From: Octopus sinensis
Lineage: Eukaryota
Assembly: GCF_006345805.1 (NCBI RefSeq)
Contig: NC_042998.1
Coordinates: forward strand, 183,396,001 to 183,460,000
DNA length: 64,000 nt
Direction: 5' to 3'
The notes beneath the pieces are model-generated. The model worked only from the letters and a program-made list of their open reading frames with translations, did no database searches and was not told the DNA's origin. Made by a program: the position numbers and the translations under genes. Shown one piece after another: positions 4,593 to 55,800 of the stretch. The stretch's first letter is position 1. Each line of letters begins with the position of its first letter.

Positions 4593-5345
4593 ATCATCAT
4601 CATCATCGTCGTTTAGCGTCCGCTTTCCATGCTGGCATGGGTTAGACGGTTTAACTGGGGTCTGGGAAGCCAGAAGGCTGCACCAGGCCCAGTCTGATCT
4701 GGCAATGTTTCTACGGCTGGATGCCCTTCCTAACGCCAACCACTCCATGAGTGTAGTGGGTGCTTTTTACGTGCCAGACAAGGCTGGCAAACGGCCACAA
4801 TTGGATGGTACTTTTTGGCGAGGCTGGCAATGGCCACGTTCGGATAGTTCTCTTATGTGCCACTGGCACTGGTATCACAGCTACGATTTCCATTGATGTT
4901 GATCGATTTTGATTTTCACTTGCCTCAACAGGTCTTCACAAGTAGAGTTTTGTGTCCCAAGAAGGAAAAGTATGCATAAGTGGACTGAGGCCACGGGTTA
5001 TGGCCTCACTTGTCCTGCCGGGTCTTCTCACGCACAGCATACTTCCAAAGGTCTCGGTCTCTAGTCATTTCCTCGGTGAGACCTAAAGTTCGAAGGTCAT
5101 GCTTCACCACCTCATCCATAAGTTCCCTCAACCGCTAGGGTGTGGCACTTTTTCACACAACTATCTTCATCCATTCTCGCCACATGACCATACCAGTGCA
5201 AATGTCTCTCTTGCACACCACAACTTATGCTTCTTAGGTCCAACTTTTCTCTCAAGGTACTTACACTCTGTCGAGTATGAACACTGACATTACACATCCA
5301 TCGGAGCATACTGGCTTCATTTCTTGCGAGCTTACGCATATCCTC
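4593..5345 (-). mobile_element. RTE-clade LINE 3' fragment (RT C-terminus, 3'UTR and (GAT)n tail)
   Basis: ORF 5112-5339 ([13 protein letters not shown]...[17 protein letters not shown]) is the post-RT region of RTE. It matches the copy at 55.1-56.5 kb. Confidence 0.9.
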
Positions 5346-5791
5346 AAAGACAAAAATAAAAGTAACATCTCTGGCTACAACTTATTGAAAATTATGGAAA
5401 AAATTAATAATCAACTTGAGATTTTCTTCATCTTTGACTACCACTATAGCTTCCAATGAACTAGATCTAAAGGAGATTTCTATATATCACTTACTAGTGG
5501 TTCCTTAAAATCTTTGTTGAAAACAAGCTTTCAATCCTACCTTGAATGAGGATCTCCTCAGACTATAAAATAGTTCATGCTGACAGGGCTCTTTCTCATT
5601 ATCACCTCTAGTCTACTTCCAGGTTTGCTAACATCTTTCTTCTGCACATTAATGTACTTGCTATCACTTCTAAGAACACGTTCCTATTCAAATGATATCA
5701 TCCTTCACCTTCTACATACAACACCTATTTCAGAACAGAAAACTTCAATTATTGTAAAACTTAAATAAAAATTTTAAAATTTGATATATAA

Positions 5792-11900: not shown

Positions 11901-14900
11901 GTTTGAAAACTAAAATGATTGAAGTTGCCACAAAGATAAATAACTGTGTAGCAGATAGTAAGAGAATTTTATATTTTAGAGGAACTAGTGAAAGTCTGGG
12001 AAACATATTGAACAAACTTCAGACAACGTCAAAGAGAAAATGTGCTCACAGGTGTAAACCAAATATTTGCAATTGGAGAAATAAGCTGCAGAGTTGGATA
12101 AGTGAAAATTATCAATATGAAAACTGCCTTACTTATCTCCCTGCCCAGCCTTTATACCATTCATCAATGTACCATTAGAGTTTTCTAAGTTACAAGATTA
12201 TTCACTTAGTACTCAATATTTTAGCCTGAATAGCTCATGGTACTTTGCCAACATTACAATTGGATCTTTGGTGTGCCATTCTGTGGACAGACGCGAGCAC
12301 CCATGCTATCTATCAATGACCTGACCAGACCTGATCTATCTATCTAATAAAACATCTTATTTCAATTTCAAATCATCATTGTTTAACGTCTGCTTCCCAT
12401 GCTAGTATGGGTTGGACGGTTCAACTGGGGTCTGGGAAGCCCGAAGGCTGCACCAGGCCAGTCAGATCTGGCAGTGTTTCTACAGCTGGATGCCCTTCCT
12501 AATGCCAACCACTCCAAGAGTGTAGTGGGTGCTTTTTATGTGCCACCGACACAGGTGCCAGACGAGGCTGGTGAACGGCCACACTCGGATGGTGCTTTTT
12601 ACGTGCCACCAGCACGGAGGCTAGGCGAGGCTGGCAACGGCCACGAATTGGATGGTGTTTGTTACGTGCCACCGGCACAGAGGCCAGTCGATGCGGTGCT
12701 GGCTATTTTCATTCATTCAATCGTTTGTTTTATTAGATAGATATATTCCACCCACCACCTCTGATTTACAGTTCACACATATTTATACATGTGGAGGGTT
12801 TTTTGTTTTTATTGTGGGTGCTGACTAGTCCACTGACTAGCACGTGTGCGTGCGGTGCATGCATCTGCTGACTGGTACGGGTCGACTCATCGATTTTCCA
12901 TGTTGGCATAGGTTGGACAGTTTGACAGGATCCTGCAAGCCACAGGACTGCATCAATCTCCAACATCAGCTTTAGCATGGTTCCCATGGCCTGATCCTCT
13001 CTTTGTAGCATCAACTACTTCACAGAGAACTGGGTGGGGGTTTTTTTTTCATGCAACCGGCACTAGTGAAGTTGCCAAGTACCTTAGAAGACAGAAGAAC
13101 GGAAAAAGCCCCTTCGACTAAGTGTGCATATGGAGAGAGGAGGTTTATGCCAGATGTTGAGAGGCTAATGTGTGATAGAGAGACGTGTCTTGCTATATCC
13201 TATCTTGTAAACAGGTGTATAACTTGTATAACAGTTAAATTCTCAGAGAGTATTTAGCAAAACCTCAAAGTGCAGGGTTGAATGATTCAGAAGGGATGTA
13301 ACAATTGAATATAACATGGCTAACAGTAACAAGAAGGCAGAAGCTAGTGCAAGAAGGTGGCGAGTTGGCAGAAACGTTAGCACGCCAGGCGAAATGCTCA
13401 GCGGTATTTCGTCTGCTGCTACGTTCTGAGTTTAAATTCCGCCGAGGTCGACTTTGCCGTTCATCCTTTCAGGGTCGATAAATTAAGTACCAGTTACGCA
13501 TTGGGGTCGATATAATCTACTTAATCCGTTTGTCCTCTCTGTGTTTAGCCCCTTGTGGGTAGTAAAGAAATAGGTATTTCGTCTGCTGTTACGTTCAGAG
13601 TTCAAAGTCCGCCGAGGTCGACTTTGCTTTCATCCTTATGGGATCAATAAATTAAGTACCAGTTACGCACTGGGGTCCCCTTGTGGGCAATAAAGAAATA
13701 AGAAGCTAGGGCAAGAAACAAAGACCTAAGAACAGTTCCAATGATTTACAGTCAACAGCATGTGATTGTGATGGAAACTGACCTCGTTGAGGCCAAATAT
13801 CTTGGTTTCTGACATAAAAAAGCAGCTAATCTGGTGGAGGCAAAGGACATGGACAACACCTGATTTGGGGGGGGGGGTCTACAGAAACCCACTTTTATGA
13901 CTGCAGAGATTCTGAATCTGCAAAAAAAAAAAATTGGCAGTTCAAAATTTCTCCCACTCCCTTTTCTTTGCCAGGGAGGTGGAGAGGGGGAAAATTAAAA
14001 TTTTGAAAACGTGTTTTTGGAGTTTTCAAAATCTTATGGTTAGGGGAAAAAATGAAAAATGAAGAAATTGGGGAGAATGGGGGCCGAGAGGTAGATATTT
14101 CAAATGGTCGAATTTTGGCAATTTTCTGGAATCTCCGTATCCGAAAACGGGGGTTTTGGGGGGGAAAAAATGGGGGGGTTTTGGGGGAAAAAAATGGGGG
14201 GGGGACAGGAGGAAGTCTTTAAAATTTTGAAATGCCGATCTTTTTTTTTTTTTTTTGCAGATTTGGAATCTCTGCAGTCGAAACCGAAAGTGGGTGCGGT
14301 CCATGTCCTTTACCTCCGCCGTTAATTCTATTTGAATTAACTGTACTGAGGGAAAAATGAAGGGAGTTGAGTACCAGAACTTGGGGTCAATGTTTACTTT
14401 AACTCCCGGTTATCAAAACAAAAACAAGTGTAATTAGGTGTAAAAAAAATGTGTGTTAATGTTTACAATATTACCAGGAAACGAAATTTCAAAAAGTAGT
14501 AGAACGGTTGTATTAAACGAATATGAAAACAAAATTTGCGCCAAGAACCTAGGGTTGGGGAGAGGACTTTCGGAAAATTCACAAGATCCGATTTTTCCCC
14601 TCATAACTTCTAGGAAGTTAACCGAGATTTGTGGGGAAAATTTTTTTTCTGAGGGAGTGGGGAAAGATGCCCATTTCTCCAACAGCCCCACAAAAGACAA
14701 AGATTAACAGGTGAACACATGGTTTTAATAGGTTAGGAATATAACATTCTTCTGAGGGTCGGTGTATCATTATGTTATAAGGTACTACTAGCGAACAGTG
14801 GTCCCGGTGCGCGCACTCGCGCTAGCTAGTCGTAAGTAGTCGATCCTACGACTTTTTAACCCCCAACCCTAACCTTAGTTTGTTTATAAAAATAATTTAT

Positions 14901-31500: not shown

Positions 31501-34500
31501 CTCTCTTTTTTATTACCCTTATTGTGTCCACTCTCTTAGTTCCATACAAATCACTATATCTAATCCTTTCACCTCAGTTTGCTAACCCTCTGAAATTTTT
31601 ATCAACATGTTTTTTCTCGTCTATATCAACTTGAAACTATTCAAGAGGAATGTTGCCCATGTTGATTTCATTGGTCTCACAGCCCTTCCCCCGACAAAGA
31701 TTTATGCTAAGAAAAATGTATGTGAAACAGTTACAGAAAGTCATTGATTGATTTGGGCCTTATTTGCATTGGTTAAAAATATAATATTTATGTATCAGTA
31801 AGAATATATCACTGAAATAGTTTGGTATTGTTTTGCTAATGGTATCGTAAATCTATAATAATGATTCTACATTTGTGTTTGGCTCTTATATATAACCTAA
31901 TATTTTATAAGGAATTTAAAATTTCTGAATGGTATAACAATGCACTATAATACAAACAATGGACTATATGCCTGTTGTAATTTAGTCATCCATAGTGTGA
32001 TATGATATTTCGGAATAATATTCCTTCTTCAGATATTCTTAGATGGACTCACTGCTATAATCAGTTTTCCAACGGCTTTTATTTTTTTGGGAAGCGTCTC
32101 AGCAGTGGTCTCACGATGCTCCTTTCAGAATTCCTCATGAGTAGTGTGTGAGGTCAGCTATGTCTCAATCACATGTGTGCTGGTACATCCTTAGTACTGC
32201 TTCTAAGTTATGTATTATATGTGCTTTTTTTTTCTCTCTTTTTTTGTTATAAACTACAGATGAGCATATTATCAAAAATAAACCTACACGCATAGGAAGC
32301 TATACTCATACACAGACTAGGGCGCCAAATTAACAACAGGCTGGAGGTTGGTAATCAGTACATTATTTAGATACATTTGGATGCGTGTAGGTTCATTTTT
32401 GATAATATGCTCATCGGTAGTTTATAACAAAAAAAAAGGGGGGAAAAGCAAGCTGCACGTATAATACATAACTTAGAAACAGCGCTACGGATGTACCAGC
32501 ACACATGAGATTGAGACATGGCCAACCTCACACACTTATCATGAGGAATTCTGGAAGGAGCATCGTGAGACCACTGCTGAGACGCTTCCAAAAAGAAAGA
32601 AAAGCCGTTGGAAAACTGATTATAGCAGTGAGTCCATTCCGAAATATCATATCAGATTATGGATGACTAAATTACAACGGGTATATAGCCCATTGTCTGT
32701 ATTATAGTGCATTGTTATACCATTCAAAACTTTTTATTCTTTACAAACAATACACAATGCTTCAAGCGAGCTACAATACTCTCCTAATATTTTATGAGTA
32801 TAAACAATTTATGACAGCATTTATAAACTATATGACTAGGTACAGGTAAATGTGATTATTAAATGCATTGAATGTGCATGACAATAAGATATCATTATAT
32901 TTATAGCATGGGGAAATAAGATTTCTGGGAATTCTGTATAAAATTTAATTTATTTTTACCATTTATTTGGCTTAAAATCAAATATTTGTTGTTTCAGTTG
33001 GATTTGCAGCCAGACGAACGAGCCAAAGTCCTCAAATTGGATGTGGGTAAGTGAAAAATTGAGCAGCATCATGGTTTTTCTTTTACTGAAGATTTATGTG
33101 GCACAAACTTGTGGAAGCTACAGTTGCACTCATAGATATTTGACCTCATTTTTTTTTTTTTATAAACTCCCCTCATATTGGCTGACTCTGCCACCTGATA
33201 TTGGCATGGTTACAACCTGTAAACAATGTCAAATTCATAAAACAATCTGGTTTGGAACAAAAAAAAAATTGATGTTGGTGTGATAAGGAAATGTGCTTCT
33301 CTAACAGCTGTATCCACTGTTGGTGATTTTAGTTGTATTTGATATATTTATTTTACTCTATCAAAGTTGTTCAGGGCTTTCAGTATTTTCCCCCCTCGCT
33401 ATTTATGTACCCCCTGCTAGTCATCATGCTCTCATATATATCCTCTAGTGCTGGTGCCATGAAAAACTCTACTCAATACACTCTGTAAAGTGGTTGGGAT
33501 TAGGAAAGGCATACAGTTGTTGAAACTAAGCCAAAATGAGTAAGATTTGGTCTTCCTACCCTATGGAAGTACAGCAATGACGCATCCAGGCCATGTCATC
33601 ATGGAAAGTTGACTCAAATCAATGATGATGATTTCTTGTTTTCATTGTTGTGGTAATAGGTGCATGATCACTGCTATTTTGTTGCAGTACACAAGCGCAT
33701 ATATGCCGACGATGTTAATTGTTAATTTGTCTTCAGTAGAATACTCTGTATTTAGATTGTTTGAAAACTATTTAATTGGCAGAGGCATAGTACTGAGATT
33801 TTGTAGGCTTTCTTAGACTAATGAGATCAAAATGGATTTTCAACTTGAGCTATAAGGAAAATATAGCCAGGAATGTGGTTCTGGGGAATAAGCATTTGGA
33901 AAAGTGAGGGGCTGGTTAATAGGTGGGCTTGAATAGTGATGTACAACTTCACTAGTTTAATGTAACAGAAACTATTATAGTAAAAGTGGAAAATAAATAG
34001 CACATTTGCATAAAAATTAGTTGTGCAGTGTTGAATGAATTTTTGCCAATAGACATGAGTTTTTTTGTTTTAATCTGAAACGGACTCTAGGATGTTTGTG
34101 TGTGTATTGTTGCAACAATGTAATTTCAGATGTATGAGTGGTCATATTTGTGTTTTGGTATTGTTTAGTATGTTTGATTGGTGAAGTTGTAGATACCGAT
34201 CTGGAAATATCTTGGCAGGATAATTGTAACATACATGGGTTTTGATTTTTTGCCAGTCAGTTTAAATGATGCTTATAACAAGAAACTAATTGATGTACTT
34301 CACTGATGCAAAAAAAAACATTTTAACCTATAAAAAAAAAGTTACCTTTAGCACACTGCAACAGTTTAGTTTTTTACTATTTACTGTTGAAATTGATACT
34401 CTCTGTTATGTACCATAAATTGAGTGATTGGTGAAATACATGCTTCTACAATTCATGTAAATATCTTCAAATTTTTCAGCTAAATTTTTGGTGTTAAATT

Positions 34501-36625
34501 TTCTTTATAACATTTGTTCAGTTCAAGTTGTAGTGAAAGAGCTGTCTTTTAGGAACCATTTGCAAGTTCTGAAGACAAAATGAACTGGGAATCCTGTTGG
34601 CATTGTATTTTTGTTTAACAAATTTTCTAATGGATTTGTGTGTGCATGCATGTGTATGTATGTCTGCAAATCTGTTTTAAAACATTTCTTCAGAATCTTT
34701 TCTACAGCTTTGAAAAAATATTTTTGTTAGAATGATAATCAGTTTGTGAACTGTGAAGTAGATCATACTGAAGGATTAGTATTTATGTTCTTTAGTTATG
34801 GCATTTAGAGGTTTAGCACTTAATAACTTGATTATGAGTTTGTTAGTGTCAACGGATTTCTTTATATTTTTAAATTACAATTTGAGAAACCTTTTATTTT
34901 GTGTTGATTCAGTTTTATCAGTCAAATTTTCCTCAGATGTGGCATACAGCTATTATTGGAGCTAATTTTCTTGGATTACATCAACATCAGTGTTTTAAAA
35001 TAACTCCCATACATTTGCAGCATTAAAAAGATGTTAAATAAAAAAATAAAAATCCACACTATTTCTTGCAATAATTGCATATGGGGATGAAAAGGAGCTA
35101 AACATGTTGATATATGTAAATTAGTTTTTGGCTTTTATAATATTTTTCAGGTGATGAGATGCTGGCGTCTTTTGAGTAGGTCATCTTCATATCTTTCCCT
35201 TACAACCAATCAAGTACCAGCTTCTCATATCTATCTCTTTCTTTTTTCTCTCTATATTTGCAGCACTGAAAACACAAGGTCTCAAGGAGACCCAAACCTT
35301 GTACCTCAGTCTCAGACACCAGTTGCTGATGTAAGAGGAATGATTCAGCCGAACCATCTGCTTTTGGCAGCATTATTGCAAATCTTTATTATGATATGGT
35401 TTATCTATATTTTAAAACATGTTAGTCTAGGACAGAACAGAAATATGTTTATTTGATCAAATTTCTTTTAGAAATAATTTTAAACCTAAAATCTTTATAT
35501 TGCTGAAATCTAAAATTTATTTAATTCATATCAATCAAGATCCTTATCTTGAAATATTTTGAGAAAATTTAGCTACTGCTTAATTTTAGCAGTAAACGCA
35601 AAAGATTTTGACTCTTTATTTTATCGAACTGCCTGGTACTTAATGTTTAAATGCCACTTTTACATCAGCAACATATGCTGTACAGCAGAAACTGTCAGTA
35701 TGCAAGTAATATATGGTATCAGCAGTTAGTCTTCTTAAGCACACAACTTGGTCATATTTACATTGATTGGCTCAGTAAGTGTTGTGTGGCAATTTTTAAA
35801 ATCTTGATGTTGTAAAGGTGGATTATTTTATTCCTACAGTTTGTTAGTAGATATTGTTTATTAAAGAGTCTTTAGATTTTCATACTTAGATATCTAGTCC
35901 TGATTGACTTTCAAGCAATAGTTTTGTTTGTGTATCAGTAATGTTGCAGATTGTTCACTTGATCCAATCAGCTCTGATCTGCATTATCATGATTACAATA
36001 GAGGATCTGATGTCTACTAGATTAAATTTTAGTTTTCTAAATTTTAGTATATTTCTTTTAAAATAAATTTAATCAAACTGTGTGGTTTATTCTGATTATT
36101 GGTAGTAAAGTTTCAAGTTTGGGATTGGTAATTATAACAGATTCCATAATAAATCTGCTATCTTTTGATTTATGCTGGAAACAGATAGCTTCAGTTATAG
36201 CAAAGAGTTTCAATAATCACTAAATCATAAGTTAAAGAAAAATAGATTATGGAAATAAGTATACCAATAGTTATAAACAAAAAGTACATTAGTTCTTCAC
36301 TGCAGATAGATGCTGAGGCTTCTATGGTTTAAATCTTTGTAGTAGGTTTTTATGCTGCAGCAAGTTGGCTTTATGTAATGTGGAATGATCTACAATAATA
36401 ATGGCTGGTGAAACTGAAAATCTAATTAATCATACACGTGTACATAGCACACGCGTGCACACACACATATGCATACACATACACAAACACACACAATACA
36501 TACACATTTGATGATTGCTCTTAAAAAATTATGTAACATTTTAAAACTTTTAAATTATCTATTATACACACACATACATGCACATAAGCACAAATAAATG
36601 TGCATGTGCGTGTGTGTATATATAT

Positions 36626-36656
<31 letters not shown>

Positions 36657-38458
36657 TATATATATAACTCGTGTTGCATATTTTCCCCCCCTGTTTCATG
36701 ATTTGTCCTAGAAAAAACATTGGTTAAACTGAATAATTTTATCAAAAATGAGTACTGACTTATTACTGGGTTGCTAATCTGTGTATTTTGTTGGTGTGTG
36801 TCTGTGTGTGTATGTATATATATATATATATATATATATTGTGTGTGTGTATATACACGTGCATTGTGTAAGGGGAAGAAGGTATTTGGTTTAGACTTAG
36901 CTTTATGTATATATGTTGCCTATCCTGTATCTGTTATTTATATCTAAATTGCATCTGAAAAAAAGTAATTCTTTGCTTTTCTATTTCATATTGGATTTGA
37001 ACGCCATAATTTTTTATGTAGAGTAAAACAATATAAAGAGAAGAAACTACTATATTGTATCCCATCACTCAACAATTCCGTGTCTCACAGACAAAAAGAA
37101 CTATGTTCATTTATGTTTTTGTGCTTCACCTAAGATATCCCTGAAGCATATAAATGTAGTTACTCATGTATTCTGGTCAAACACCACTGAAAAAGAAAAG
37201 CAACAGCATCAGTCAAAACAAAATTTTTCATAACTGGGTTTTCAGCCTTTGGGGATATAATTCTTGAAAAGTATCAGTTGAAATTGTGTGACTTAAATTT
37301 TGATTTCTCTATTGTCTTTTTAACAGAGTTTCAACATTTTCTTTGCTAATCAGTTGTTGGGTTGTTTTCTTTCCAGTTCCAATCTCCTGTATTGCATATG
37401 GAATCCAGCTTCTAATAGGAAGGATGATATTTCTGAAATATTTTTCATAAGTTTTACTAAAATGAAACATAATTATCACCTTCACTTTCTAGCCTTTTGG
37501 TCTAGTTCCAGCTACTTTGAAAGGATGTCTGTATTATTTAGAACTTTCATTGAATTAAATTGAAGTACTCTAGTGATTTTAATGGTTAAAATCCCAGTAC
37601 TAATTATTTTTTTTGTTTTTTTTTTGTTCCTGAAACTGCTTTAATGCTGGTCGATGCTTGTCTGAAGGAGTTAACAAAAATAGTGTAGCTGTTCATGAAT
37701 GAATTTTAACATATCAATTATGGAATGATTTGATTGTTTGAACACATCTTCAATCATTTCTCATTAATTAGATCATATACATGACCATAAACTTTAAAAA
37801 TCTCCATCTCTGTGTGTATATAGATATGTATATATATATATCTCTATATATTCATATGTTCATATTTAAATATAGTGGTGGTATGTGTGTGGCAGAATTG
37901 GTAAAGCAGCAAACAAAATACTTTGAGGTATTTGGAATATGCTCCAAGTTCAGACCTTCCCAGATCCACTTTGCTCTTCACTTTTCCAAGGTCGATGAAA
38001 TAAGCATTGGAATTAATGCAGTCACCTCAGCATGACCATATATAATCAAAGAGGCAGTATTTTCAAACTACTCAGTAGCTCAATAAGAGAACTATTTTGG
38101 AAAAACAGTAATAAAGGAATGAAACTAGCAAGATTGTAGATGTAAGAGTCTGGCTTGGGGGTTAGTTTGTTTCCTCTCAATGCTTATGTGCAATTGATGT
38201 TTTACTTTAAAGGGAATCATCATCATCATCATTCTTTAATGTCCACTTTCTCGTGCTTGTGTGAGTTGGATGGAATTTATTGCGGTAGATTTTCTATGGT
38301 TGGGTGCCTTACCTGTCGCCAACACTCATTTGTTTCCAGGTAAGGTAATATTTCTTCCTGGCTACTTGTGTTTTTACAGAATATTGGAAATGAATGACAC
38401 TGCTTGACAGTGACAACTATTACAATGTCAAGACAACACATGGATTACATTCATGCAC

Positions 38459-38489
<31 letters not shown>

Positions 38490-38667
38490 AGACTGGTTTC
38501 TTTCTAAGTTTTCCTGTATACCAAACCCATTCACAAGGCTTTGAGCAGCCTGGGGCTATAATGGAAGACACCCTAGTTGTCATGCACCTGTAACCATGTA
38601 ATTGGGAAGCAAATTCCTCAACTGAAAATGTGTGTATGTATGTATATATATATATATTATATATATA

Positions 38668-38705
<38 letters not shown>

Positions 38706-41700
38706 TCATTATCATCTCTATTTTAACATCAGCTTTTCTATGTTTGTATGGCATAAGCATGACTTTGTGGTTTAGAAGGTTGCTCCCCAACCATTTGGTC
38801 TCAGGTTCAAGTTCTGCTATGGACAAGTGTCTTCTATATATGTACATGTGCGTACCCTTGTCTTGACATTATGTGATGGTTATAAATGAGCATTCCTCTC
38901 GTACAAGCAATGTTGTTTGTTTCCAGTCTTCTGTAAAAAGAATGTCTGACCATGAGGAAATATTAACTTGTTTAGAAACAGTTGAAGGTTGTTGACAACA
39001 AGAGCATCCAGCTCCCTCAACAAATTCCATCTGACCCAAACAAGCATGGAAAATTTGACATTGTGATGATGATTTTGTGTGTAGCACACATAGAATATGC
39101 ATGTAGGTATAGATACATGTACGTATATATAGATACATACATATGTGGGGTCGGCTATGTGTGTTCTGTAATACTTGTTTACTTTATAACAATTTTTCAA
39201 TAATTTTTGTATTTTTTTTTTTATTCATATCAGGTACATTCCAGTTCCTGGTAGCTGTTAAGTCTTATCACTCACATTGTTTTATAATAGTATTGAAATA
39301 TTTCATCAATCTTTTCTTTCTGTTTGTTTTTCAGTGAGCTGAAATTGATCTCTAAATATTGTCATATCCATTGTTAGTCTTTGTTATACAGTTGTCAGTT
39401 ACCAAGATAATTACTTATATGGATGTTTAGAGACACAGTCCATGTATATTTTTCTACCACTATAGATTTTAGGTTTCTGTTATCCGACCATGACATTATC
39501 AAACTATTCTATCAACTTTTTGCTTGATGGGAGACTACAAAACAATCTGTTGTAACTAACACTATGTGTAAAGCCAACATATTGATGCTGTTGATGCTAA
39601 ACTGACTTGTGTTGCATTAGCTGGTTCAGTTCACTTCACATTTAGTGGACCATTTATTTATTTAATAACCTTAGAATCCAAATCTAATAAAATTGATTTA
39701 CTCCCTCTTAAAAATTTAAGTAGCTAGTAATTTAGTTTAATCTAACCCAGTTAAAATACATGTTGATCATGGTGGGTGCAAGTATGATTTATGTCAAAAT
39801 TATTTCTTAAACAATCTGGAAACAAATTGTTTCCCACTTCTCAGTTAACTTCGTTGTTCCAAGTGGGTCTCATTGATAACTGAATTACCTGTGAACAGAT
39901 TGAGTGTTCCTGGACATGAAAATTTTTCATCATAACTTTCTTTTTTTAATTCCATCTCTTAAATGATAGAATATTTTAGGTTAAATTGTATTGAAATATA
40001 TCATTTAGTAAATTGAAAGCTTCCATGTGTAATTATATCTTGCTTTTTTTTTTGTTTTGTTATTAAAACATTACTTCCATCACTTGGATTTGAAAACCAG
40101 AAAATAATACTTATTTCTTTCTACCAATTATTATCTAATTATATATATATATTTAATGAAACTTGTCTTCATGTTCATTAAAATGGTTAATGAGAAATAA
40201 GATATGTTTATCTTGTTAGACAATTTTCTAACTGTAAAACACGATGCTGCTTTTTCTATGGTGTGAAATGTATTTTATGGATACTGTGCTCATTTATCTT
40301 TTAAGGCTACATTTTCGTGGTGTTCTTTATTATTAATCCTTTTAGACTATGATTAGTTAAAAATTTTAAGCTGATATATTGATATTCATTTCCTTTTACT
40401 AATATGTCTATGGTGGAGCGATATTCTTATTTCCTTTTCTTGGTTGTTTTGTATATGGTCACTCCATTTATGTTTTTATTTAGCTTCCCAGTAAGTTCCT
40501 TTCAGTATTTAGTGAAGTTCTTTGCATCTTCCCTTCCTAGTTCTTAGAAATTTGTAAGCATCTAAGCTTATCTCACTCTCTCGTACCTTATTCTTTTTTT
40601 TCAAGTTTCTTCATTTATATTAACATTCTGGTCTATCATATTAAGGGAATCGTAAAACTTTGTTATTGGAAATAGCTGAATGAATTTTAATAACATCAAT
40701 TGAGCATATGAGATTATCAATCTGAAGATGGTTTTATTTTCTATGCAATAAGACATACCATTAGTTACAGATTATAGCCAATTTAGTGAATGTTCTTAGT
40801 TAACATTATAAATTCATCACAGGCTCAACAGTTAAGTCTTCAATATAATAGTTGCCAAGTGCATATAACTCTTTAGATGGAAATCAAAGATAAAATGCTA
40901 GCAGTTATGGAATAATCTTCAGGATTAATAAATCCATTCTTAAACATAGTTAATTATTTGACTCATTCTCTATTCTGCACACTGAGAACCATTCTTCTAC
41001 ACTACCCTGCATTTGGTGGCTTTTCCTGAGCTAATAACTTTTGTAGATTACAAACGAGTATGTTGAGATAAAACTGTAAATACAGATTTATATGAAAAGA
41101 ATCAGTTTTAAGCATGTCAGCCCGTTCTTTGCAGATTTTGTATTTCTAATCAGATATCATTTATCTAGGTTCAATACCAATAATGTTTTGATGCTCAACA
41201 CAAAGTTCAGATCTGATTAGATTTTATTTTTCACCCCTTGAATCTATAATTGTTGTTCTATCAATATTCCTTTGATGAAATCTGGCAGAGATCTTCAAAA
41301 TTATACTTTGAATGCATTTCAGTAATTTTAATTATTTGATTTCTTTTTTTAGATTTTAGTTATGCAGTTAACTGTAGCAAAAAAAATATATTTGTCTACT
41401 TTAGTGCTATAGTTGGAATTAAGTGTTAAGCTGGGCACTTGGGATTCTGATTTTAACTATTTTCTTTTGATCTGAAGGAAGTGGCTGTGCCTATTGCCCT
41501 TCTAGATTTTCTGAGCCCAATAAGATTGAGACATTGAATGAGGATTGTTGGGAAAACATGGGCAGGGAGGGAATTTCAGAAGGTTCACATTTCTAGGAAG
41601 GACTGGGGTCAGTGGTTAGTGTAGGCTTGGGGAGTGGTGTGACAATATGGGTAATGAGGAGAGACGAGTCAACAATACCAGAGCAGAAGTGACATGAGAC

Positions 41701-47700: not shown

Positions 47701-49770
47701 GGCTTATAAAGAATAAGTCCTGGGGTCGATTTGCTCGACTAAAGGCGGTACTCCAGCATGGCTACAGTCAAATGACTGAAACAAGTACAAGAGTATATAT
47801 ATATATATATACGCATGCGCGCGCACATATATCTATATGTATGTGTATAGTGTATATATGTACGTATATATATATATATATATGTGTATATACCTATGTG
47901 TGTATATATATGTATATACATGTATGTGTATATGTATATATGCATATATGTATGTATATATTTATAAGTATATATATCTGTATATGTATGTATTTATGTG
48001 TGTATATATATGTTTGTATGTATTTATATATGTATATGTATTTATATCTATATGTATGTGTGTATACATGTGAATGTGTGTATATATACATGTAAATGTA
48101 TGTGTATGTATATAAATATATGTATGTGTATATAAATATACACGTGTATCTTGCATATGTGTGTATGTATATAGGTATGTGTATATATATATATATACAC
48201 ATATGTGTGTATATATATATGTGTGTATATATATATATGGCTGTATGGGAAGAAGCTTGCCTCTCAAGCACATGGTTCCGTGTTCAGTCTCGATGCATGG
48301 TGCTTTGGGCAAGTGTCTTGTAGTATAGCCTCGGGTTGACCAAAGCCTTGTTGGTGGATTTGGTAGACTGAAGCTGGTAGGAACCCATCATATATGTGTG
48401 TGTATGTATTTGTGTGTCTGTGTTTCCCCCCTCAGCATCGCTTGACAAGTGATGTTGGTGTTTTTATGTCCCCGTACTTAGTGTTTTGGCAAAAGAGACT
48501 GATAGAATAAGTACTAGGCTTACAAAGAATATGTCCTGGGATTGAATTGTTCGACTAAAGGTTGTACTTCAAGTGACTGAGACAAGTCGAAGAATCAAAG
48601 AATATATATCTTTGTATGTATCTGTGTGCGCGTGTAGACTCATGACTGGACCTGTGCTGGTGGCACATAAAAAGCACCATTTGATAATGGTCGATGTCAG
48701 TGTCAGCTGACTGGATTGGTGCCTGGCTCGCCAGCCCCCTGTCAAACCGTCCAACTCATGCCAGCATGGAAAGCGGATGTTAAATGATGATGATACATAC
48801 ATGTGTGTGTATATCTTTTACTGGTTTTAGCCCAAGGCTGAGGTCTTGCAGCTGCACCACCTGTAGATGTTCAGTATTGTTTTGGGGGAAGTAGTGAGTT
48901 AGGCGGAGCTGCTCTTTACATATCTTGCTGCAGTATATATATATATGTATATATACATCCGTATATGTGTATATATATATATATATATATGCATATGTGT
49001 GTGTATGTATATATATATATATATATGCATATGTGTGTTTATGTATATATGTATGTGTGTTTATGTATATATGTATGTGTGTATATATATATATATGCAT
49101 ATGTGTGTATATATATATATATATGCATATATGTGTGTGTGTATGTATGTATATATATATATATATATATATATAAGTTCAGCAAAATTTAGATTCAGAT
49201 GAATATGGTACTTAAGTCAAAGGCACCAGAATTTTGTATGGTATTATCCATATAAATCAATGGGGTGATTATAAGCAACAAGTATATCCGAGATAGAGTG
49301 GTACAATTGTTTCATGCTACTTCATTTTATTAAACACTGTAAGTATTACATCAGTTTTAAAATGTCGAGCAATCTTCAGCTACTTATAGAAATTTTCTAA
49401 TCAAACGGACAATGCACATTGTTATCTCTATATCATTTGCCAACATTATAAAGAGGGTAGATATGAGTCAGAGAGTAAATTTACTACTATCATGTTCTTA
49501 AGAATGAAATCAACCTCTCTGTCTATATATCTACCCTCTTTATAATGTTGGCAAATGAAATAGAGATAAGAATGTGCATTGTCCGTTTGATTGGAAAATT
49601 TCTTTAAGTGGCTGAAGATTGCCCAGCATTTTAAAACTGATGTAATACTTACAGTGTTTAATAAAATGAAGTAGCATGAAACAATTGTACCACTCTACCT
49701 CGGATATACTTGTTGCTTATTTTGATTATTTACATATATATGCAAATATAAGAATGTCTGTGTATGAATG

Positions 49771-49801
<31 letters not shown>

Positions 49802-52800
49802 TATATATAAGTTCAGCAAAATTTAGATTCAGATGAATATGGTACTTAAGTCAAAGGCACCAGAATTTTGTATGGTATTATCCATATAAATCAATGGGGT
49901 GATTATAAGCAACAAGTATATCCGAGATAGAGTGGTACAATTGTTTCATGCTACTTCATTTTATTAAACACTGTAAGTATTACATCAGTTTTAAAATGTC
50001 GAGCAATCTTCAGCTACTTATAGAAATTTTCTAATCAAACGGACAATGCACATTGTTATCTCTATATCATTTGCCAACATTATAAAGAGGGTAGATATGA
50101 GTCAGAGAGTAAATTTACTACTATCATGTTCTTAAGAATGAAATCAACCTCTCTGTCTATATATCTACCCTCTTTATAATGTTGGCAAATGAAATAGAGA
50201 TAAGAATGTGCATTGTCCGTTTGATTGGAAAATTTCTTTAAGTGGCTGAAGATTGCCCAGCATTTTAAAACTGATGTAATACTTACAGTGTTTAATAAAA
50301 TGAAGTAGCATGAAACAATTGTACCACTCTACCTCGGATATACTTGTTGCTTATTTTGATTATTTACATATATATATGCAAATATAAGAATGTCTGTGTA
50401 TGAATGTATATATATATAAAACAAAACAAAACAATGTATGTATGTGTATAAAAAATGATATAGAAATAACATTGTTTTAAACAATTTTCTATTGTTTCTT
50501 CAAAAATGTGATAAGTTAGAAGATATTTTTAGAATTATTTGCCTCAGTGATAAAAGTTTTTCCTATATAAATGGAAGATCACTTAAAGTTATACATACTC
50601 GTAATATTTACATCTCTTGATTTTAACAAATTGTAATTCATCCAGCAGCAAAATGTGGTTTGGAAAGAAAAGGAATTTATTACTTGATGGAAGACCAGTT
50701 TCATGCCGTCCTATTTGATTGAAAAATTATCAGCTCTTCCATATGTAGAAAACTTAATGAAAGATAAATTATCAAGCAAATTTATCTAAAGTGTTCCAGG
50801 CAACTAGTTATAGAAAATACTTTATTATTGACAAGTAGGGTTGGGTCTTTCCTTAATCATGAACTTGGATTTTGTTTTAGCTTTTAAACTTTCCTTCATA
50901 AGTATGTTATCTTATAATCTATGTGGCTCAACTAATACATAGTATGGGGATTGTTTAACAAGCTGTAAATTTATTTTATTTGAAGAATTATACAGAACTT
51001 ATTGTAAAGAACAATTCTTTACTTTTCCTTGTATATCAAAAGCATTTTCTAATTACTTTTTGCACATTGAATCTTCTTGACTTTTATCCCAACTGTTTTA
51101 TAACAGTTGCTGATAACATCTCCGTCCAACCCGTGCTAGCACGGAAAACGGATGTTAAACAATGATGATTATCATCATTTCCTTTCTGTTCAGTACATTC
51201 GCACATTTAGTGACCCAACATTCATTAACAAAAAAAAAATCTTTGTTGCTGAAATACTAGAATTAATTCTCATATCAACTTTAAAGTAACATTAATACTG
51301 TTTTTTGATTAGCATCCTTCATTCTGTTCAACTACAGAGTAGATTAGTGTTTAATATTATACCCATAAAAGCATTAAATTCCCTAACACTGGCTTTATTG
51401 ATACATGTAAAGAAATCTGAAGTCAAAAGTGTAGTAATAGAAATTAATAATAAACATATTGTGTATATATAGGTAATATATGTATGTATAAATGTACGTA
51501 CGTATATGTAATGCTATTTACTGAAAATTCTAAAAGTTATGGAATAAGAATAACATGGAATATAATTTGTTAGGACTGCAGAATACTTATTGAATGAAAA
51601 TAATATTTGCCTTGAAGGAAAATGCTTTGCTTTTTATAAACTGCATATTCATATGGAACTTTCAGTTCATAAATAAAATTGTATAATCCTATTAGATTTT
51701 GTTTTTGTAAACAATGCTAACTCCATGAAATCAATTAACTATATCCTGTTTGTTTATGGGCCCCCTTTAAAAAGTTTTGATAGTGAAATATTGCTAGGTT
51801 GTTTATATCCTTCCTGATTTCAGTCTTCAGTTCAGGCACACCAAATTTAGGATATTTAAACCTGTTTTATGTTCAGACTGGCCAGATCTGGTCTCTCACA
51901 CCAACCCTACAATATCGTTTTAAAAAGTAACAGCTACCTCATCAAAATCTCATAGCACCAATATAATGCCTGATTAGTTCAAGGCAATGTGGATAAAAAA
52001 GGATTAATTTTGGCAGAATAATGCAAACACTAAAGGGTTAATTTTGTATCTAGTTTTTGGTGATATTGGAAGATTAATTCATCAAATTTCCAATTCCCTG
52101 AAGTTTATAACCTATCTAACTCATTAAAGACATTAGATGCCCTCCCTCCCACTTTTTTCCAAATAATTGGGAGTTATTTCACTTTAATGTCACTTATACC
52201 AATAATAATATCCTAATCTTCTAAACATTAAGTTAAAAAAAAAAAACCCAACAAAATGTAAGTTATAATTTGTCAGAGGAGCAGTGTTTCATGAGAATAC
52301 CATTTATTTTAGTATAAAACATTAAGCACATTTTCCAACCTGCTCCCAAATTTTTAACTCTTTCAGTAATTTTTGCCTGATCTAGAATATTCCAAGGACA
52401 GTGTCACTATTAAATGATATATTTTAGCCAATCTAGAAAGCATCTGCGTTTATTCTCTTTATGTTGTTCTTAAATGCTATTTTTCTCTCTTTTTTTGTGT
52501 TTTTATATATCAGTAAGAAGTTCAATATTGCTCGTGCCACCCTTACGGCCAGCTGTTTTATGGGGCTTTTGGTGAGACTACAGTGGCCAAAATTAGGGCC
52601 AAACTGGAGGCAATCAGTCGATCGGTGCTTGTGATGTGGTAATCCTTATTTCACATGAATATATTGTAAATTGTTTGATTCCTAAATACTGACAGCCTAT
52701 ATCTACTGGTGCACATCATTGATATTTTCTCTCTACGACTCTTGATTAGTAATCACTGAAACTTTTAAAGCAATATTAGTCTGGATGATCTAATATTCTT

Positions 52801-55800
52801 GCTCTCATACTTTAATTTTTTTAATGTATCTTCCCTTTTTATATTTTTCTCCATATCCCTTAAGGACTATGTCTGTGCCTCAAATAAAAAAAAAATAATC
52901 TTGTCTCTGCCCCAGTCTTCATTTGTCTTGGCCCTGTTCATATTCCGGCTCTTTTTTCTTTTTCTTTTTTTTTTTTTTTTTTACACAATATCATTATATA
53001 GTTTCTTCCAATACATGTCCTATTTTTAATTGTTTATTTAACTATCTTTTGGTTTTGCTGACAGATTTGGCTGCAGAAGAACTACAAACGCCACAGGCTG
53101 AACAAATAGGTCCCATTGTTGAAGGTCCCGGTGCAAAAAGAGACCAGAAACCATTTGTGTTGCCCAAATTGACAGCATCTCAACAAGAAGCTATACAGAA
53201 AGCTAAGAAATATGCAATGGAACAAAGTATTAAAAGTGTCCTGGTGCGACAGACCATTGCTCATCAACAACAGGTAAATTATGTGTGTGTGTGTGTGTAT
53301 ATATATAAATAAATAGAAGACCCAGCAACTAAAGTCCAGACCAGTTAAAAGTACCCCTGATGCATTGGGTGATATGATATGCTTGAGAAGACCTTTTGAG
53401 TCAAGTAAAATCAATATCATAGCTGTGGCCAGTGCCCTCTGACTGGCTCCTGTGCCAGTGACAACGTAAAAAGCACTAGCTGAATGTGGTCAATGCCAGG
53501 TCCACCTGACTGGCTCCCGTGCCTGTGTCACGTAAAAAGCACCGTCCGAACATGGCCGATGCCAATACCTCCTGACTGGCTCCCATGCCAGTGGCACATA
53601 AAGCATGGCCAATGCCAGAACTCCCTGACTGGCTCCCGTGCCAGTGGCACATAAAAAGCACTATCCAAACCTGATTGATGCCAGGCCTGCCTGAGTGACT
53701 CTTGTGCCAGTGGCACATAAAAAGTACCCACCACACTTGGAGTGGTTGGCGTTAGGAAGGGCATCTGGCTGTAGAAACACTGCCAGATCAGATTGGAGCC
53801 TGGTGCACTTGCTGGCTCTCCAGACCTCAGTCAAACTGTCCAACCCATGCCATCAGTGGAAAATGGACATTAAATGATGATGCTGTGTATTATGTTTATA
53901 TTTTTCATGCTAGTATATGGTTTTTGATAGTTTGCTTTGTTTGGATTAGCTACTTTTATATTTAGATGTCTGTCTTATTTGTAAAGTAACTAAATAGATC
54001 TGTGAGTTTGATTTGTTCCAGCTTAGTCAACTGTTATGTGACTGATTATTGAACAGAACCTTAACATGGCCCTCAAGCAGAATCAGCATGAGACAGTATG
54101 TGTGAGATAAAGCTGCCTTTGTGAATTACAAGTACATTCTTTCACGCAGTTTCCTTCTAACCATTTCTCACTCCTTGGGATTAAGTTAACCCAAGTCCAT
54201 GGTAGACAATACTTACTCTAAATGCTGTGAGGTGGGATTTAATCTGAGACCTAATAGTTGCAAAGTGAATGGGTCATAATGTAGAAGCTGCTCAGAGATT
54301 CATTAGTATTTCATTGGTAACTCTGGGTAGCTTCCTTTTGTTATATTTGCTGTGAAATAAATAAATAAAAAAGTTCTTTTTGTTTATAGTAATTAGTCAC
54401 TGTAGTTTTATCTGGAACACTTAAAGTAGAATGAGTAAACAAATTTGGTCAGTGGGCTTCAGGTCAGACAGACTATGATTATGTCTGGTTTCTTTAGAAA
54501 ATTTGGAAGCGGAACACTTTTTAAAGTTTCTCACCCATTCTGTTTCTAGACACAATCCATTATCATTGTCTGAATTGTTTTCACTGTTAAAAGTTGAAAT
54601 GTGATGCTTGTTGCCTTGTTTTTTGTCTTCTTGCTTTAGCTATTTCTTTGAGAAGATTCTTCAAATTCAGATTAAACATGATAATCATCAGATTGATAAT
54701 TTGATTTGACCTTTAAATACCAACTCACCTGAGGCTGTCAATTTATGTTCGAAAACACCAGCTTAATAAGAACCAAGTTATTTTACTAACATCTACATTA
54801 TTTTAAAAATTAATTGAAATAGTCATTATTTTTCAGTAGAAATATGGGAAAAAAAAAAAAGGTTAAATAGAAATATTTAAATCAGACTAGTCTTTGTCCT
54901 TCATATCTATATAGTAAATGTTTTGTTTGTTTTTTTTTATTTTAATGTTTTTCTATAATTTAAAACAAGTTTTTCATATTTTAGATATTTACTGTCATTT
55001 AAAATTATTCTTTCTGTTTTCAGCAAATGGCAAACTTTCAAAATACTGTTCAAAGGCAGCAGGCCTTAGCATTAATGTGCAGGTAAGTTATTTCAATTAT
55101 CAAAACTAGCTTTCTTTTTGCCCCTGGGAGCTCCTCTATGCTGACTACCTTGCTCTAATTGCTGAGTCACTATCAGAACTAGAGAAGTTTCAGGTTTGGA
55201 AGCAAGGATTAGAATTGAAAGGCCTAGCTAAAACCAAAGTCCTAATAAGTAGGAAGGCAGACAAACCACAAATCCCTTCTGGTAGATGGCCCTGCTTAAT
55301 CTGTAGAAATGGCGTAGGAAGATAGTTTTTGTATGTGGCAGATGCTCAGGAGCAATAAACACTGAAAATGTGCAGAGAGCAACTTCCGCCATATTCCAAG
55401 GAGAAAAACTAGTTGTAGTTGATAGCTTCTGTTACCTAGGTGACCAAGTCAGTAGCTGGGGAGGGTGCACTGAAAGTGTAGCTGCTAAAATAAGAATAGC
55501 CTGGGCAAAGTTCAGAGAGCTCTTACCTCTGCTGGGAACAAAAGGCCTCTCACTCAAAATAAAAGGTAGACTGTATGATGCATGTGTACGAACAGCCATG
55601 CTATATGGCAGTGAAACATGGGCCGTGACTGCTGAGGACATGCATAAGCTCGCAAGGAATGAAGCCAGCATGCTCCGATGGATGCGTAATGTCAGGTGCC
55701 TACTCAACAGAGTGTAAGCACCTTGAGAGAGAAGTTGGACATAAGAAGCATCAGATGTGGTGTGCAAGAGAGATGACTGCACTGGTATGGTCATGTGGCG

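What the first reader, a model, noticed from the sequence alone, without database searches (positions are those of the whole stretch)
35151..39250. Frame-gated, combinatorial microexon cassette in PUF60 intron 2 (candidate autoregulatory AS-NMD switch)
Seen in sequence: between exon 2 (ends in phase 1) and the 53065 exon there are three small units with GT-AG boundaries: A 35151-35175 (25 nt), B 35264-35330 (67 nt) and C 39234-39250 (17 nt). A+C (42 nt) inserts a clean peptide, ...[23 protein letters not shown].... B+C (84 nt) is also open. Every other combination stops early. A alone or B alone stops at TGA 53099-53101. C alone or A+B stops at TAG 53107-53109. A+B+C creates TGA exactly at the C/53065 junction. 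Established: many splicing factors tune their own level through unproductive splicing coupled to NMD, and PUF60 acts on U-rich 3' splice sites. Inference: two frameshifting microexons 4 kb apart must be co-included, forming an AND-gate that can produce either N-terminal isoforms or decay.
Basis: partly seen in the sequence, partly recalled or inferred. Interest (0 to 1): 0.85.

Follow-up and report, generated by a model that had tools for sequence, protein, structure and literature searches.

The report
Conserved frame-breaking exon block in PUF60 intron
Two of the three proposed mini-exons (A and B) lie in a deeply conserved island of a splicing-factor gene's long intron and probably form a "poison exon" that lowers the gene's own output, while the third (C) and the proposed A+C "AND-gate" look like chance.

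Summary
The coordinates, GT-AG borders, lengths (25/67/17 nt) and every frame or stop claim are correct, and the gene is PUF60. The three units are not equal.

A and B sit in a 274-nt island (35119-35392). It is 91% identical to the same intron of a distant relative (B 65/67). Coding exons there are only 78-83% identical, third codon positions 48%, and the rest of the 20-kb intron cannot be aligned.

C has no counterpart in the relative. About 32 AG..GT units in the intron score as well as the weakest of A/B/C. A and B each have four possible frame-restoring partners.

A is 25 nt here but 30 nt in the relative, so the A+C arithmetic is not conserved. B shifts the frame and brings a stop into exon 3 in both species.

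Best reading: B is a conserved regulated, unproductive (poison) cassette exon with a 45-nt pyrimidine tract. A is an accessory or cryptic exon that starts AG|GT, like a ratchet point. C is chance.

No transcript data for this lineage were reachable, so exon use, NMD and autoregulation remain inferred.

The parts
32998..33046 (+). PUF60 coding exon 2 (..[12 protein letters not shown], ends in phase 1), the upstream partner of all the proposed splices.
   Evidence: Sequence and splice sites. The motif [11 protein letters not shown] matches the EPAKKLKLENG-type end of exon 2 in other mollusc PUF60 proteins. Abalone and clam have the same exon layout.
35119..35392 (+). Conserved island 1. It holds the 32 nt upstream of A, A itself, the 88-nt A-B intron, B, and 62 nt downstream of B.
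   Evidence: 91.5% identity over 281 columns to L001 2440-2720. The edges are sharp: identity is 32% upstream and 44% downstream of the island. It is single copy. It has no Rfam match and no unusual fold (z -1.3).
35151..35175 (+). Unit A (25 nt). It starts AG|GTGATG, so an acceptor is juxtaposed to a donor-like sequence. Its own donor is TTTTGA|gtaggt. It is probably an accessory or cryptic exon, not a frame-conserved coding microexon.
   Evidence: It is the least conserved segment of the island: 77%, with 2 substitutions and a 5-nt indel, so 30 nt in L001. Its splice sites are identical in both species. The donor re-formed after ligation to exon 2 scores 4.3 against 2.8 for A's own donor on a crude PWM.
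35176..35263 (+). 88-nt A-B intron. It ends in a 45-nt tract that is 80% pyrimidine, just before B's acceptor.
   Evidence: 93% identity to L001. Pyrimidine count. PUF60-responsive exons are reported to have extended pyrimidine tracts (Kralovicova 2018, as cited in the KATMAP preprint).
35264..35330 (+). Unit B (67 nt, 1 mod 3). It is the conservation peak and the candidate frame-shifting (poison) cassette exon.
   Evidence: 65/67 identical to L001 2591-2657. It ranks 8th of about 9,800 AG..GT units in the window's intron and 7th of about 3,200 in L001 on a crude PWM. Its inclusion gives a stop in exon 3 in both species.
39234..39250 (+). Unit C (17 nt). It is most likely a chance AG..GT unit.
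   Evidence: No counterpart in L001 between island 1 and exon 3. Several unconserved units score as well or better. It is only one of four possible frame-restoring partners.
52445..52735 (+). It holds a long pyrimidine tract, then CAG|TAAGAAG...TTTTG|gtgaga (58 nt, 52514-52571), with an inner acceptor CCAG|CTGTTT (19 nt, 52553-52571). A further block at 52681-52735 is conserved in contigs from further sequencing runs.
   Evidence: 97.3% identity over 226 nt to L001 9355-9580, and 100% over 52448-52572. Both candidate units give TGA at the junction with exon 3 in both species. No Rfam match and no stable fold (z +1.4).
53065..53273 (+). PUF60 coding exon 3. It carries the out-of-frame stops TGA 53099-53101 and TAG 53107-53109, which are 172 and 164 nt upstream of its donor.

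Best explanation
Island 1 (35119-35392) is a functional, exon-containing regulatory module of PUF60 intron 2.

Its core, B (67 nt), is most likely an alternatively included cassette exon. B has a conserved 45-nt pyrimidine tract, a CAG acceptor, a GTAAGA donor, and about 60 nt of conserved intron on each side. Because 67 is not a multiple of 3, including B, with or without A, shifts the frame. That puts a stop codon 3-15 codons into exon 3, far upstream of many exon junctions. Such mRNAs would be unproductive and probably NMD substrates. B would then work as a poison exon that sets the PUF60 level.

Because PUF60 helps recognise pyrimidine-rich 3' splice sites, the simplest circuit is negative feedback: more PUF60 leads to more B inclusion and less productive mRNA.

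A is a short unit of variable length (25 or 30 nt) with poorly conserved content. It begins AG|GT. It more likely helps define or process the module, as a cryptic or recursive-type exon or an exon-definition partner for B, than encodes a peptide. C is not part of the system.

Shown: the anatomy, the conservation pattern, and the frame consequences in two species.
Inferred: that B is actually spliced in, that the product is degraded, and that PUF60 itself controls it.
For: - The relative L001 is deeply diverged. Over exons 3-9, codon positions 1, 2 and 3 are 94%, 99% and 48% identical. Exons are 78-83% identical. The rest of the intron gives no alignment.
- Island 1 is nevertheless 91.5% identical, with B at 97%, the A-B intron at 93% and the 62 nt downstream of B at 92%. 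Identity falls to 32% and 44% outside the island.
- All four splice sites are identical in both species.
- B ranks among the top 10 exon-like units of the intron in both species on a crude PWM. The only two of the window's top 10 that lie in conserved sequence are B and the 19-nt unit of island 2.
- B gives early stops in exon 3 in both species.
- B's pyrimidine tract is 36/45 in the window and 37/45 in L001. PUF60-activated exons are reported to have extended pyrimidine tracts.
- The island has no ncRNA family match, no stable fold and no protein homologue.
- Context from other molluscs. RefSeq lists N-truncated PUF60 isoforms whose CDS starts at the first Met inside exon 3, often from several transcripts each. 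Bivalve RNA-seq contigs show a stop-laden exon spliced directly onto exon 3. Abalone intron 2 has 95-100% identical islands built the same way.
- Highly conserved poison exons are the known mode of control for many splicing factors (PMC4379411; RBM39 in PMC10477243).
Against: - There is no transcript evidence for this species or its relative. No RNA-derived contigs or proteins of close relatives appeared in the database searches.
- Island 1 could be compared with only one species, so it cannot be resolved which positions matter.
- Conservation is nearly as high in the A-B intron and the flanks as in B. A non-exonic element would look similar.
- The splice-site scoring is a rough PWM written from memory, not a trained model.
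- Both substitutions in B fall on third codon positions of the frame set by a 25-nt A. That hints weakly at coding use.
- The islands have no detectable sequence homologue in abalone. The cross-mollusc parallels are therefore analogies, not demonstrated homology.
- How NMD recognises premature stops in molluscs is not established.
Confidence: 0.5

Rival explanations
1. A, B and C are three real microexons. A+C (42 nt) or B+C (84 nt) give productive N-terminal isoforms, and every other combination is degraded, so the cassette acts as a combinatorial AND-gate.
For: All frame arithmetic is correct. C has a respectable acceptor and donor, ranking 10th on the crude PWM.
Against: C is not conserved, although the whole interval was covered. 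There are four alternative frame-restoring partners of equal quality. A is 30 nt in the relative, so A plus a 17-nt unit would be out of frame there and A alone would be in frame. No protein in the databases contains the predicted peptides, but no proteins of close relatives appeared in that database, so this is a weak negative.
Confidence: 0.05
2. A and B are coding alternative exons that, with a third conserved unit, add a disordered N-terminal segment. In the window, A+B plus the 19-nt unit 52553-52571 is 111 nt and gives [37 protein letters not shown].
For: In the window, A+B+19 nt is in frame and open, and the 19-nt unit lies in the 100% conserved core of island 2. The two substitutions in B are both at third codon positions of this frame. 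The peptide is hydrophilic, like PUF60 N-termini.
Against: In L001, A is 30 nt, so the same combination is 116 nt and stops early. B is conserved at 97%, including would-be synonymous sites, while true coding exons have 48% third-position identity. The intron between A and B is equally conserved. No homologous peptide was found.
Confidence: 0.12
3. Island 1, and island 2, are conserved non-exonic elements: an intronic splicing silencer or enhancer platform, a decoy exon that promotes intron retention, a transcriptional enhancer, an unannotated small RNA, or a partner sequence for RNA editing. On this reading the exon-like borders are incidental.
For: Conservation is nearly uniform across the putative exons and the intron between them. 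Highly conserved intronic elements can be enhancers. Decoy exons are known to regulate retention of long introns (PMC7373989, abstract as listed).
Against: The element is strand-asymmetric and built exactly like exons on the sense strand: pyrimidine tract, AG, an open unit, then GTAAGA. No Rfam family matches. Fold energies are ordinary. There is no significant complementarity to the neighbouring exons or between the islands.
Confidence: 0.25
4. A is a recursive splice site (ratchet point) with a short cryptic RS-exon. Exon 2 is first joined to 35151, the re-formed donor GG|GTGATG is then used, and A never appears in mRNA. This is compatible with the best explanation for B.
For: The AG|GT juxtaposition is conserved. 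The host intron is 20 kb. A's content is poorly conserved and its length varies (25 or 30 nt, out of frame here), as described for cryptic RS-exons (PMC8605326). The re-formed donor scores above A's own donor, 4.3 against 2.8.
Against: GTGATG is a mediocre donor compared with the GTAAGT of fly ratchet points. The site lies only 2.1 kb into the 20-kb intron, so it would shorten the remaining intron very little. There is no intermediate or lariat evidence. The PWM is crude.
Confidence: 0.2

Closest known systems
Ultraconserved poison exons of SR and other splicing-factor genes (Lareau 2007 and Ni 2007 from memory; Lareau & Brenner 2015, PMC4379411; Tra2b, PMC11791180)
   Same: The host gene is a splicing factor. 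An exon-like unit plus its flanking intron is conserved more strongly than the coding exons. Inclusion brings in a premature stop.
   Different: Classical cases usually carry the stop inside the exon, whereas B works by frameshift with the stop in the next exon. The conservation shown here is between two invertebrate genomes only. Inclusion, NMD and feedback are untested. No PUF60 poison exon turned up in the literature searches.
RBM39 autoregulatory poison exon (PMC10477243)
   Same: RBM39, like PUF60, is a U2AF65-related splicing factor (own knowledge), and it lowers its own level by promoting a poison exon in its own pre-mRNA. This is the closest mechanistic model for the feedback proposed here.
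   Different: The RBM39 circuit is shown experimentally in human cells. Here the only support is the cis-anatomy (a long conserved pyrimidine tract).
Drosophila ratchet points with short cryptic RS-exons (Joseph et al.; PMC8605326)
   Same: Unit A has a juxtaposed acceptor|donor that is conserved, short downstream exon content that is poorly conserved and out of frame, and a long host intron.
   Different: The donor GTGATG is weaker than the fly consensus. A lies near the 5' end of the intron. Recursive splicing has not been shown in this lineage here.
Frame-preserving neuronal-type coding microexons (3-27 nt)
   Same: A and C are short and sit in a long intron.
   Different: A (25 nt) and C (17 nt) are not multiples of three. 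A's length is not conserved and C is not conserved at all.
Human PUF60/FIR N-terminal splice variants such as FIR lacking exon 2 (own knowledge, not checked here)
   Same: Alternative splicing also affects the N-terminal, non-RRM part of PUF60 in humans.
   Different: Those are in-frame protein isoforms made from annotated exons. There is no sequence relationship to the islands here.

Membership tests
Poison-exon (AS-NMD) cassette of a splicing-factor gene | The host gene encodes a splicing regulator. | tested here: met
   PUF60 by tblastn and by database hits.
Poison-exon (AS-NMD) cassette of a splicing-factor gene | Inclusion introduces a premature stop well upstream of the last exon junction. 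| tested here: met
   Including B, with or without A, gives TGA or TAG in exon 3, 164-172 nt before its donor, with at least 6 further junctions downstream. The same outcome holds in L001.
Poison-exon (AS-NMD) cassette of a splicing-factor gene | The exon and its flanking intron are conserved above the level of the coding exons. | tested here: met
   B is 97% identical and its flanks 92-93%. Coding exons are 78-83%, and third codon positions 48%.
Poison-exon (AS-NMD) cassette of a splicing-factor gene | The exon is actually included in a fraction of transcripts. | not testable with these tools
   No transcript contigs or proteins of this lineage were retrievable. There are only indirect parallels in other molluscs.
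Poison-exon (AS-NMD) cassette of a splicing-factor gene | The inclusion isoform is stabilised when NMD is blocked, and its level responds to the factor's own dose. | not testable with these tools
   This needs experiments.
Recursive splice site with cryptic RS-exon | A conserved, juxtaposed acceptor|donor (AG|GT) inside a long intron. | tested here: met
   tttttcag|GTGATGAG is identical in both species and the intron is 20,018 nt.
Recursive splice site with cryptic RS-exon | A short downstream exon with its own donor, with poorly conserved content that is generally out of frame. | tested here: met
   A is 25 nt in the window and 30 nt in L001 and is 77% identical. It is out of frame in the window. 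The criterion is taken from PMC8605326.
Recursive splice site with cryptic RS-exon | The re-formed donor is stronger than the RS-exon donor and close to the GTAAGT consensus. | tested here: inconclusive
   The crude PWM gives 4.3 against 2.8, but GTGATG lacks the +5 G.
Recursive splice site with cryptic RS-exon | Recursive intermediates, a sawtooth read pattern or lariats are observed. | not testable with these tools
   No RNA data were available.
Frame-preserving coding microexon | The length is a multiple of 3, or the combined length is conserved, and the peptide is conserved. | tested here: not met
   A is 25 versus 30 nt, C is 17 nt and absent in the relative, and no peptide homologues were found.
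Known structured ncRNA (Rfam families) | A match to a covariance model, or unusually stable folding. | tested here: not met
   There are no matches near gathering scores at either island. Fold z-scores are -1.3 and +1.4.

The most novel reading that the evidence does not exclude
PUF60 intron 2 in this lineage carries two ultraconserved-type islands. Each is built as a long pyrimidine tract, an AG, a short frame-breaking unit and a GT. Together they would form an ancient, possibly mollusc-wide, unproductive-splicing circuit for a U2AF65-type factor. Three observations elsewhere in molluscs point the same way: RefSeq isoforms whose CDS starts inside exon 3, bivalve transcripts with a stop-laden exon spliced to exon 3, and abalone islands of the same build. 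In this lineage the elements would be frozen at 91-100% identity, with unit A acting as a ratchet-type cryptic exon. I found no published PUF60 poison cassette in the literature searches run here, so this may be the first, and it would be a lophotrochozoan counterpart of the vertebrate SR-gene ultraconserved elements.
Probability: 0.3. Interest if true: 0.6.

Novelty: new member of a known kind. Interest (0 to 1): 0.45.

Why it matters
If B, and the island-2 unit, are real poison exons, then PUF60 would join the splicing factors that set their own dose by unproductive splicing. PUF60 is a dosage-sensitive factor in humans (own knowledge). It would also show that extreme intronic conservation around such exons arises outside vertebrates. 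That would give a clean system for asking why poison exons are conserved far beyond what a stop codon needs.

For genome annotation, it flags two short conserved intronic islands that gene models would probably miss.

Tried and rejected
- Protein searches with the predicted A+C isoform found only exon-3 matches. Searches with a chimera of all island reading frames on both strands and with the 101-aa read-through ORF against 1.8 billion representatives found nothing meaningful. So there is no conserved protein.
- An exact look-up of the island ORF found nothing on record, so the window's species is not in the collection. No proteins of close relatives were among the PUF60 hits.
- Two scans of JGI metagenomes with the B core and the island-2 core found nothing.
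- A search for the run accession in papers found nothing.
- L003, a more distant relative, has no island within 10 kb upstream of its exon 3, and the contig could not be read further.
- The Logan contigs L002 and L004-L009 stop at a poly-T run and reach only the last block of island 2.
- The ncRNA hypothesis was rejected: Rfam at permissive thresholds and fold z-scores gave nothing.
- The RNA-editing or long-range-pairing hypothesis found no support: duplex energies against shuffles and a reverse-complement search were unremarkable.
- The repeat or transposon hypothesis was rejected: both islands are single copy and syntenic.
- The alternative-promoter or first-exon idea was considered and set aside. 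Conservation starts only about 30 nt before A, and the ATG inside A is TTG in the relative.
- Sequence homology between the islands and abalone or clam intron 2 is not significant against shuffles. There is only a resemblance of the pyrimidine tracts.
- Isoform X2 proteins could not be looked up, because only the longest product of a gene is indexed.


Full report
**1. Checking the observation**

All three units exist exactly as described, with AG and GT borders.
- A is 35151-35175 (25 nt).
- B is 35264-35330 (67 nt).
- C is 39234-39250 (17 nt).

Exon 2 (32998-33046) ends in phase 1, and exon 3 starts at 53065. Its donor is at 53273/53274. I translated every combination:
- Skipping all three units is in frame.
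- A+C and B+C are open.
- A or B alone stop at TGA 53099-53101.
- C alone or A+B stop at TAG 53107-53109.
- A+B+C makes TGA at the junction with exon 3.

The gene is PUF60. The human protein aligns to eight exons of the window. A 341-aa model built from the window hits mollusc PUF60 at 84-88% identity. Abalone and clam PUF60 have the same exon 2/exon 3 layout, so 'intron 2' is a fair label. No proteins of close relatives were among the hits.

**2. Is it more than chance?**

The frame pattern follows from lengths of 1, 1 and 2 mod 3. With a rough splice-site PWM, whose frequencies I wrote from memory, 32 units of 8-120 nt in the 20,018-nt intron score at least as well as the weakest of A/B/C. 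Of 481 ordered pairs of those units, 34 are in frame and stop-free. A and B each have four possible frame-restoring partners, and C is just one of them. By minimum site score, B ranks 8th and C 10th of about 9,800 units. Several unconserved decoys rank higher. Splice-site quality and the 'clean' peptides therefore do not single out these units.

**3. Comparative evidence**

The exon-3 read-through ORF of a relative (P0002) led to a 122-kb ENA contig, from which I fetched 10 kb on each side of exon 3 (L001). Exons 3-9 are collinear and 78-83% identical. Codon positions 1, 2 and 3 are 94%, 99% and 48% identical. Synonymous sites are therefore saturated, and the intron is otherwise unalignable.

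Against that background, two islands stand out.

Island 1 is window 35119-35392 against L001 2440-2720, at 91.5% identity over 281 columns. Segment by segment:

| Segment | Identity |
|---|---|
| 33-70 nt upstream of A | 32% |
| 32 nt just upstream of A | 88% |
| A | 77% |
| A-B intron | 93% |
| B | 97% (65/67) |
| 62 nt downstream of B | 92% |
| Further downstream | 44% |

All four splice sites are identical in the two species.

A carries a 5-nt indel. It is 30 nt in L001, so there it is in frame on its own (GDELLASGFL), whereas the window's 25-nt A shifts the frame. B shifts the frame in both species. In L001 the stop comes three codons into exon 3.

C has no counterpart anywhere between the island and exon 3 of L001, although that whole interval was covered.

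**4.

Window 52445-52672 is 97.3% identical to L001 9355-9580, and 100% identical over 52448-52572. A further block at 52681-52735 is also present in short contigs from further sequencing runs. The island lies 393 nt upstream of exon 3.

It contains a long pyrimidine tract, then CAG|TAAGAAG...TTTTG|gtgaga (58 nt), with an inner acceptor that gives a 19-nt unit. Either unit creates TGA at the junction with exon 3 in both species. The 19-nt unit ranks 5th in the window's intron. So the only two of the window's ten best exon-like units that lie in conserved sequence are B and this one.

**5. What the islands are not**

- They are not repeats: both are single copy and syntenic.
- They match no known RNA family.
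- They are not unusually structured: fold z-scores are -1.3 and +1.4.
- They are not detectably complementary to each other or to neighbouring exons.
- They are not protein-coding in any frame that finds a homologue.
- They have no detectable sequence homologue in abalone intron 2.

**6. Context from other molluscs (indirect)**

RefSeq lists N-terminally truncated PUF60 isoforms for Mytilus, Haliotis, Argopecten, Pecten, Ylistrum and Physella. Their CDS begins at the first Met inside exon 3 (MEQSIKSVL.. or MKPFSLPKL..), often from several transcript accessions each. From my knowledge of how such pipelines behave, this is what one expects when the 5' part of a transcript breaks the main ORF.

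RNA-seq contigs from a myid-like bivalve, assembled in five runs, show a stop-laden 92-nt unit spliced directly onto exon 3. The sequence just before the junction does not end in AG, so this is a true splice. The unit's pyrimidine tract is conserved in the Mya arenaria intron. It also resembles the tract of island 2, but the resemblance is not significant against shuffles.

Haliotis rufescens compared with H. asinina shows 95-100% identical islands on a 65-75% background in intron 2. Each is built as pyrimidine tract, AG, short unit, GT. One example is a 16-nt unit, CGTCAGAAATATTGAT|gtaaga.

These observations make regulated, frame-breaking exons in this intron plausible across molluscs. They do not prove homology with the window's islands.

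**7. Mechanism**

Best explanation (confidence about 0.5): B is a conserved cassette exon whose inclusion is unproductive. The conserved 45-nt tract upstream of it is 80% pyrimidine. That is the kind of extended tract reported for PUF60-activated exons, so negative feedback by PUF60 is the simplest circuit. Its relative RBM39 does exactly this (PMC10477243). Highly conserved poison exons are the rule for many splicing factors (PMC4379411).

A fits the published description of a ratchet point with a short cryptic exon (PMC8605326). It has a conserved AG|GT junction, poorly conserved content that is out of frame, and a long host intron. The re-formed donor also scores above A's own donor. Against this, its GTGATG donor is mediocre and it lies only 2.1 kb into the intron. 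I rate this sub-hypothesis at about 0.2.

Shown: the anatomy, the conservation and the frame outcomes. Inferred: actual inclusion of B, decay of the product and feedback by PUF60.

**8. Rivals**

- A coding A+B(+19 nt) isoform, about 0.12. It is open in the window but broken in L001.
- A non-exonic conserved element or decoy exon, about 0.25.

**9. Verdict**

There is a real, strongly constrained, frame-breaking module here. Its core is B together with a second island near exon 3, not the A+C pairing. This would be a new member of a known kind: a poison-exon, ultraconserved-type element in a splicing-factor gene. I found no description of one for PUF60 in the literature searches I ran.

Noticed in passing
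window 52445-52735: A second intronic island lies 393 nt upstream of exon 3. It is 97.3% identical over 226 nt to the relative (100% over 52448-52572), which is more conserved than any coding exon. It contains 58-nt and 19-nt exon-like units that both create TGA at the exon-3 junction in both species.
   Followed up: partly
L010 (Haliotis rufescens) ~4965-5045, ~5380-5500, ~6870-7090, compared with L011 (H. asinina): Abalone PUF60 intron 2 also holds 95-100% identical islands on a 65-75% background. Each is built as pyrimidine tract, AG, short unit, GT, for example the 16-nt unit CGTCAGAAATATTGAT|gtaaga. There is no significant sequence similarity to the window's islands.
   Followed up: partly
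L012 1099-1190 (also L013-L016); L017 3660-3711: Bivalve RNA-seq contigs from five runs show a stop-laden 92-nt unit spliced directly to PUF60 exon 3, so the ORF starts at a Met inside exon 3. The unit's pyrimidine tract is conserved in the Mya arenaria intron and resembles the tract of window island 2.
   Followed up: partly
Proteins P0245, P0247, P0265, P0258, P0267, P0269, P0274, P0281: RefSeq annotates N-truncated PUF60 isoforms starting at the first Met inside exon 3 in many molluscs, often from several transcript accessions each. This suggests widespread transcripts with 5' variants that break the ORF.
   Followed up: partly
window 55370-55717 (+), in the intron after the 55024-55082 exon: A 115-aa ORF (..[47 protein letters not shown]..) looks, from memory, like the tail of a non-LTR retrotransposon ORF2. 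It has no Pfam hit.
   Followed up: partly
window 12528-12698: A 63-nt tandem repeat (2.7 copies, 79% matches) sits in the most GC-rich part of the window, inside a 113-aa mechanical ORF with a repeated FYVPP motif. Its meaning is unknown.
   Followed up: no
window 36430-36860 and 47770-49820: Dense TA/TG microsatellite fields give many sub-threshold matches to the Rfam families mir-297, mir-466 and mir-3149. This is low-complexity noise, not microRNA genes.
   Followed up: no
window 35322-35334 versus 35660-35672: A perfect 13-nt reverse complement of B's donor region lies 330 nt downstream, outside the conserved island (E about 0.09). It is probably chance.
   Followed up: no
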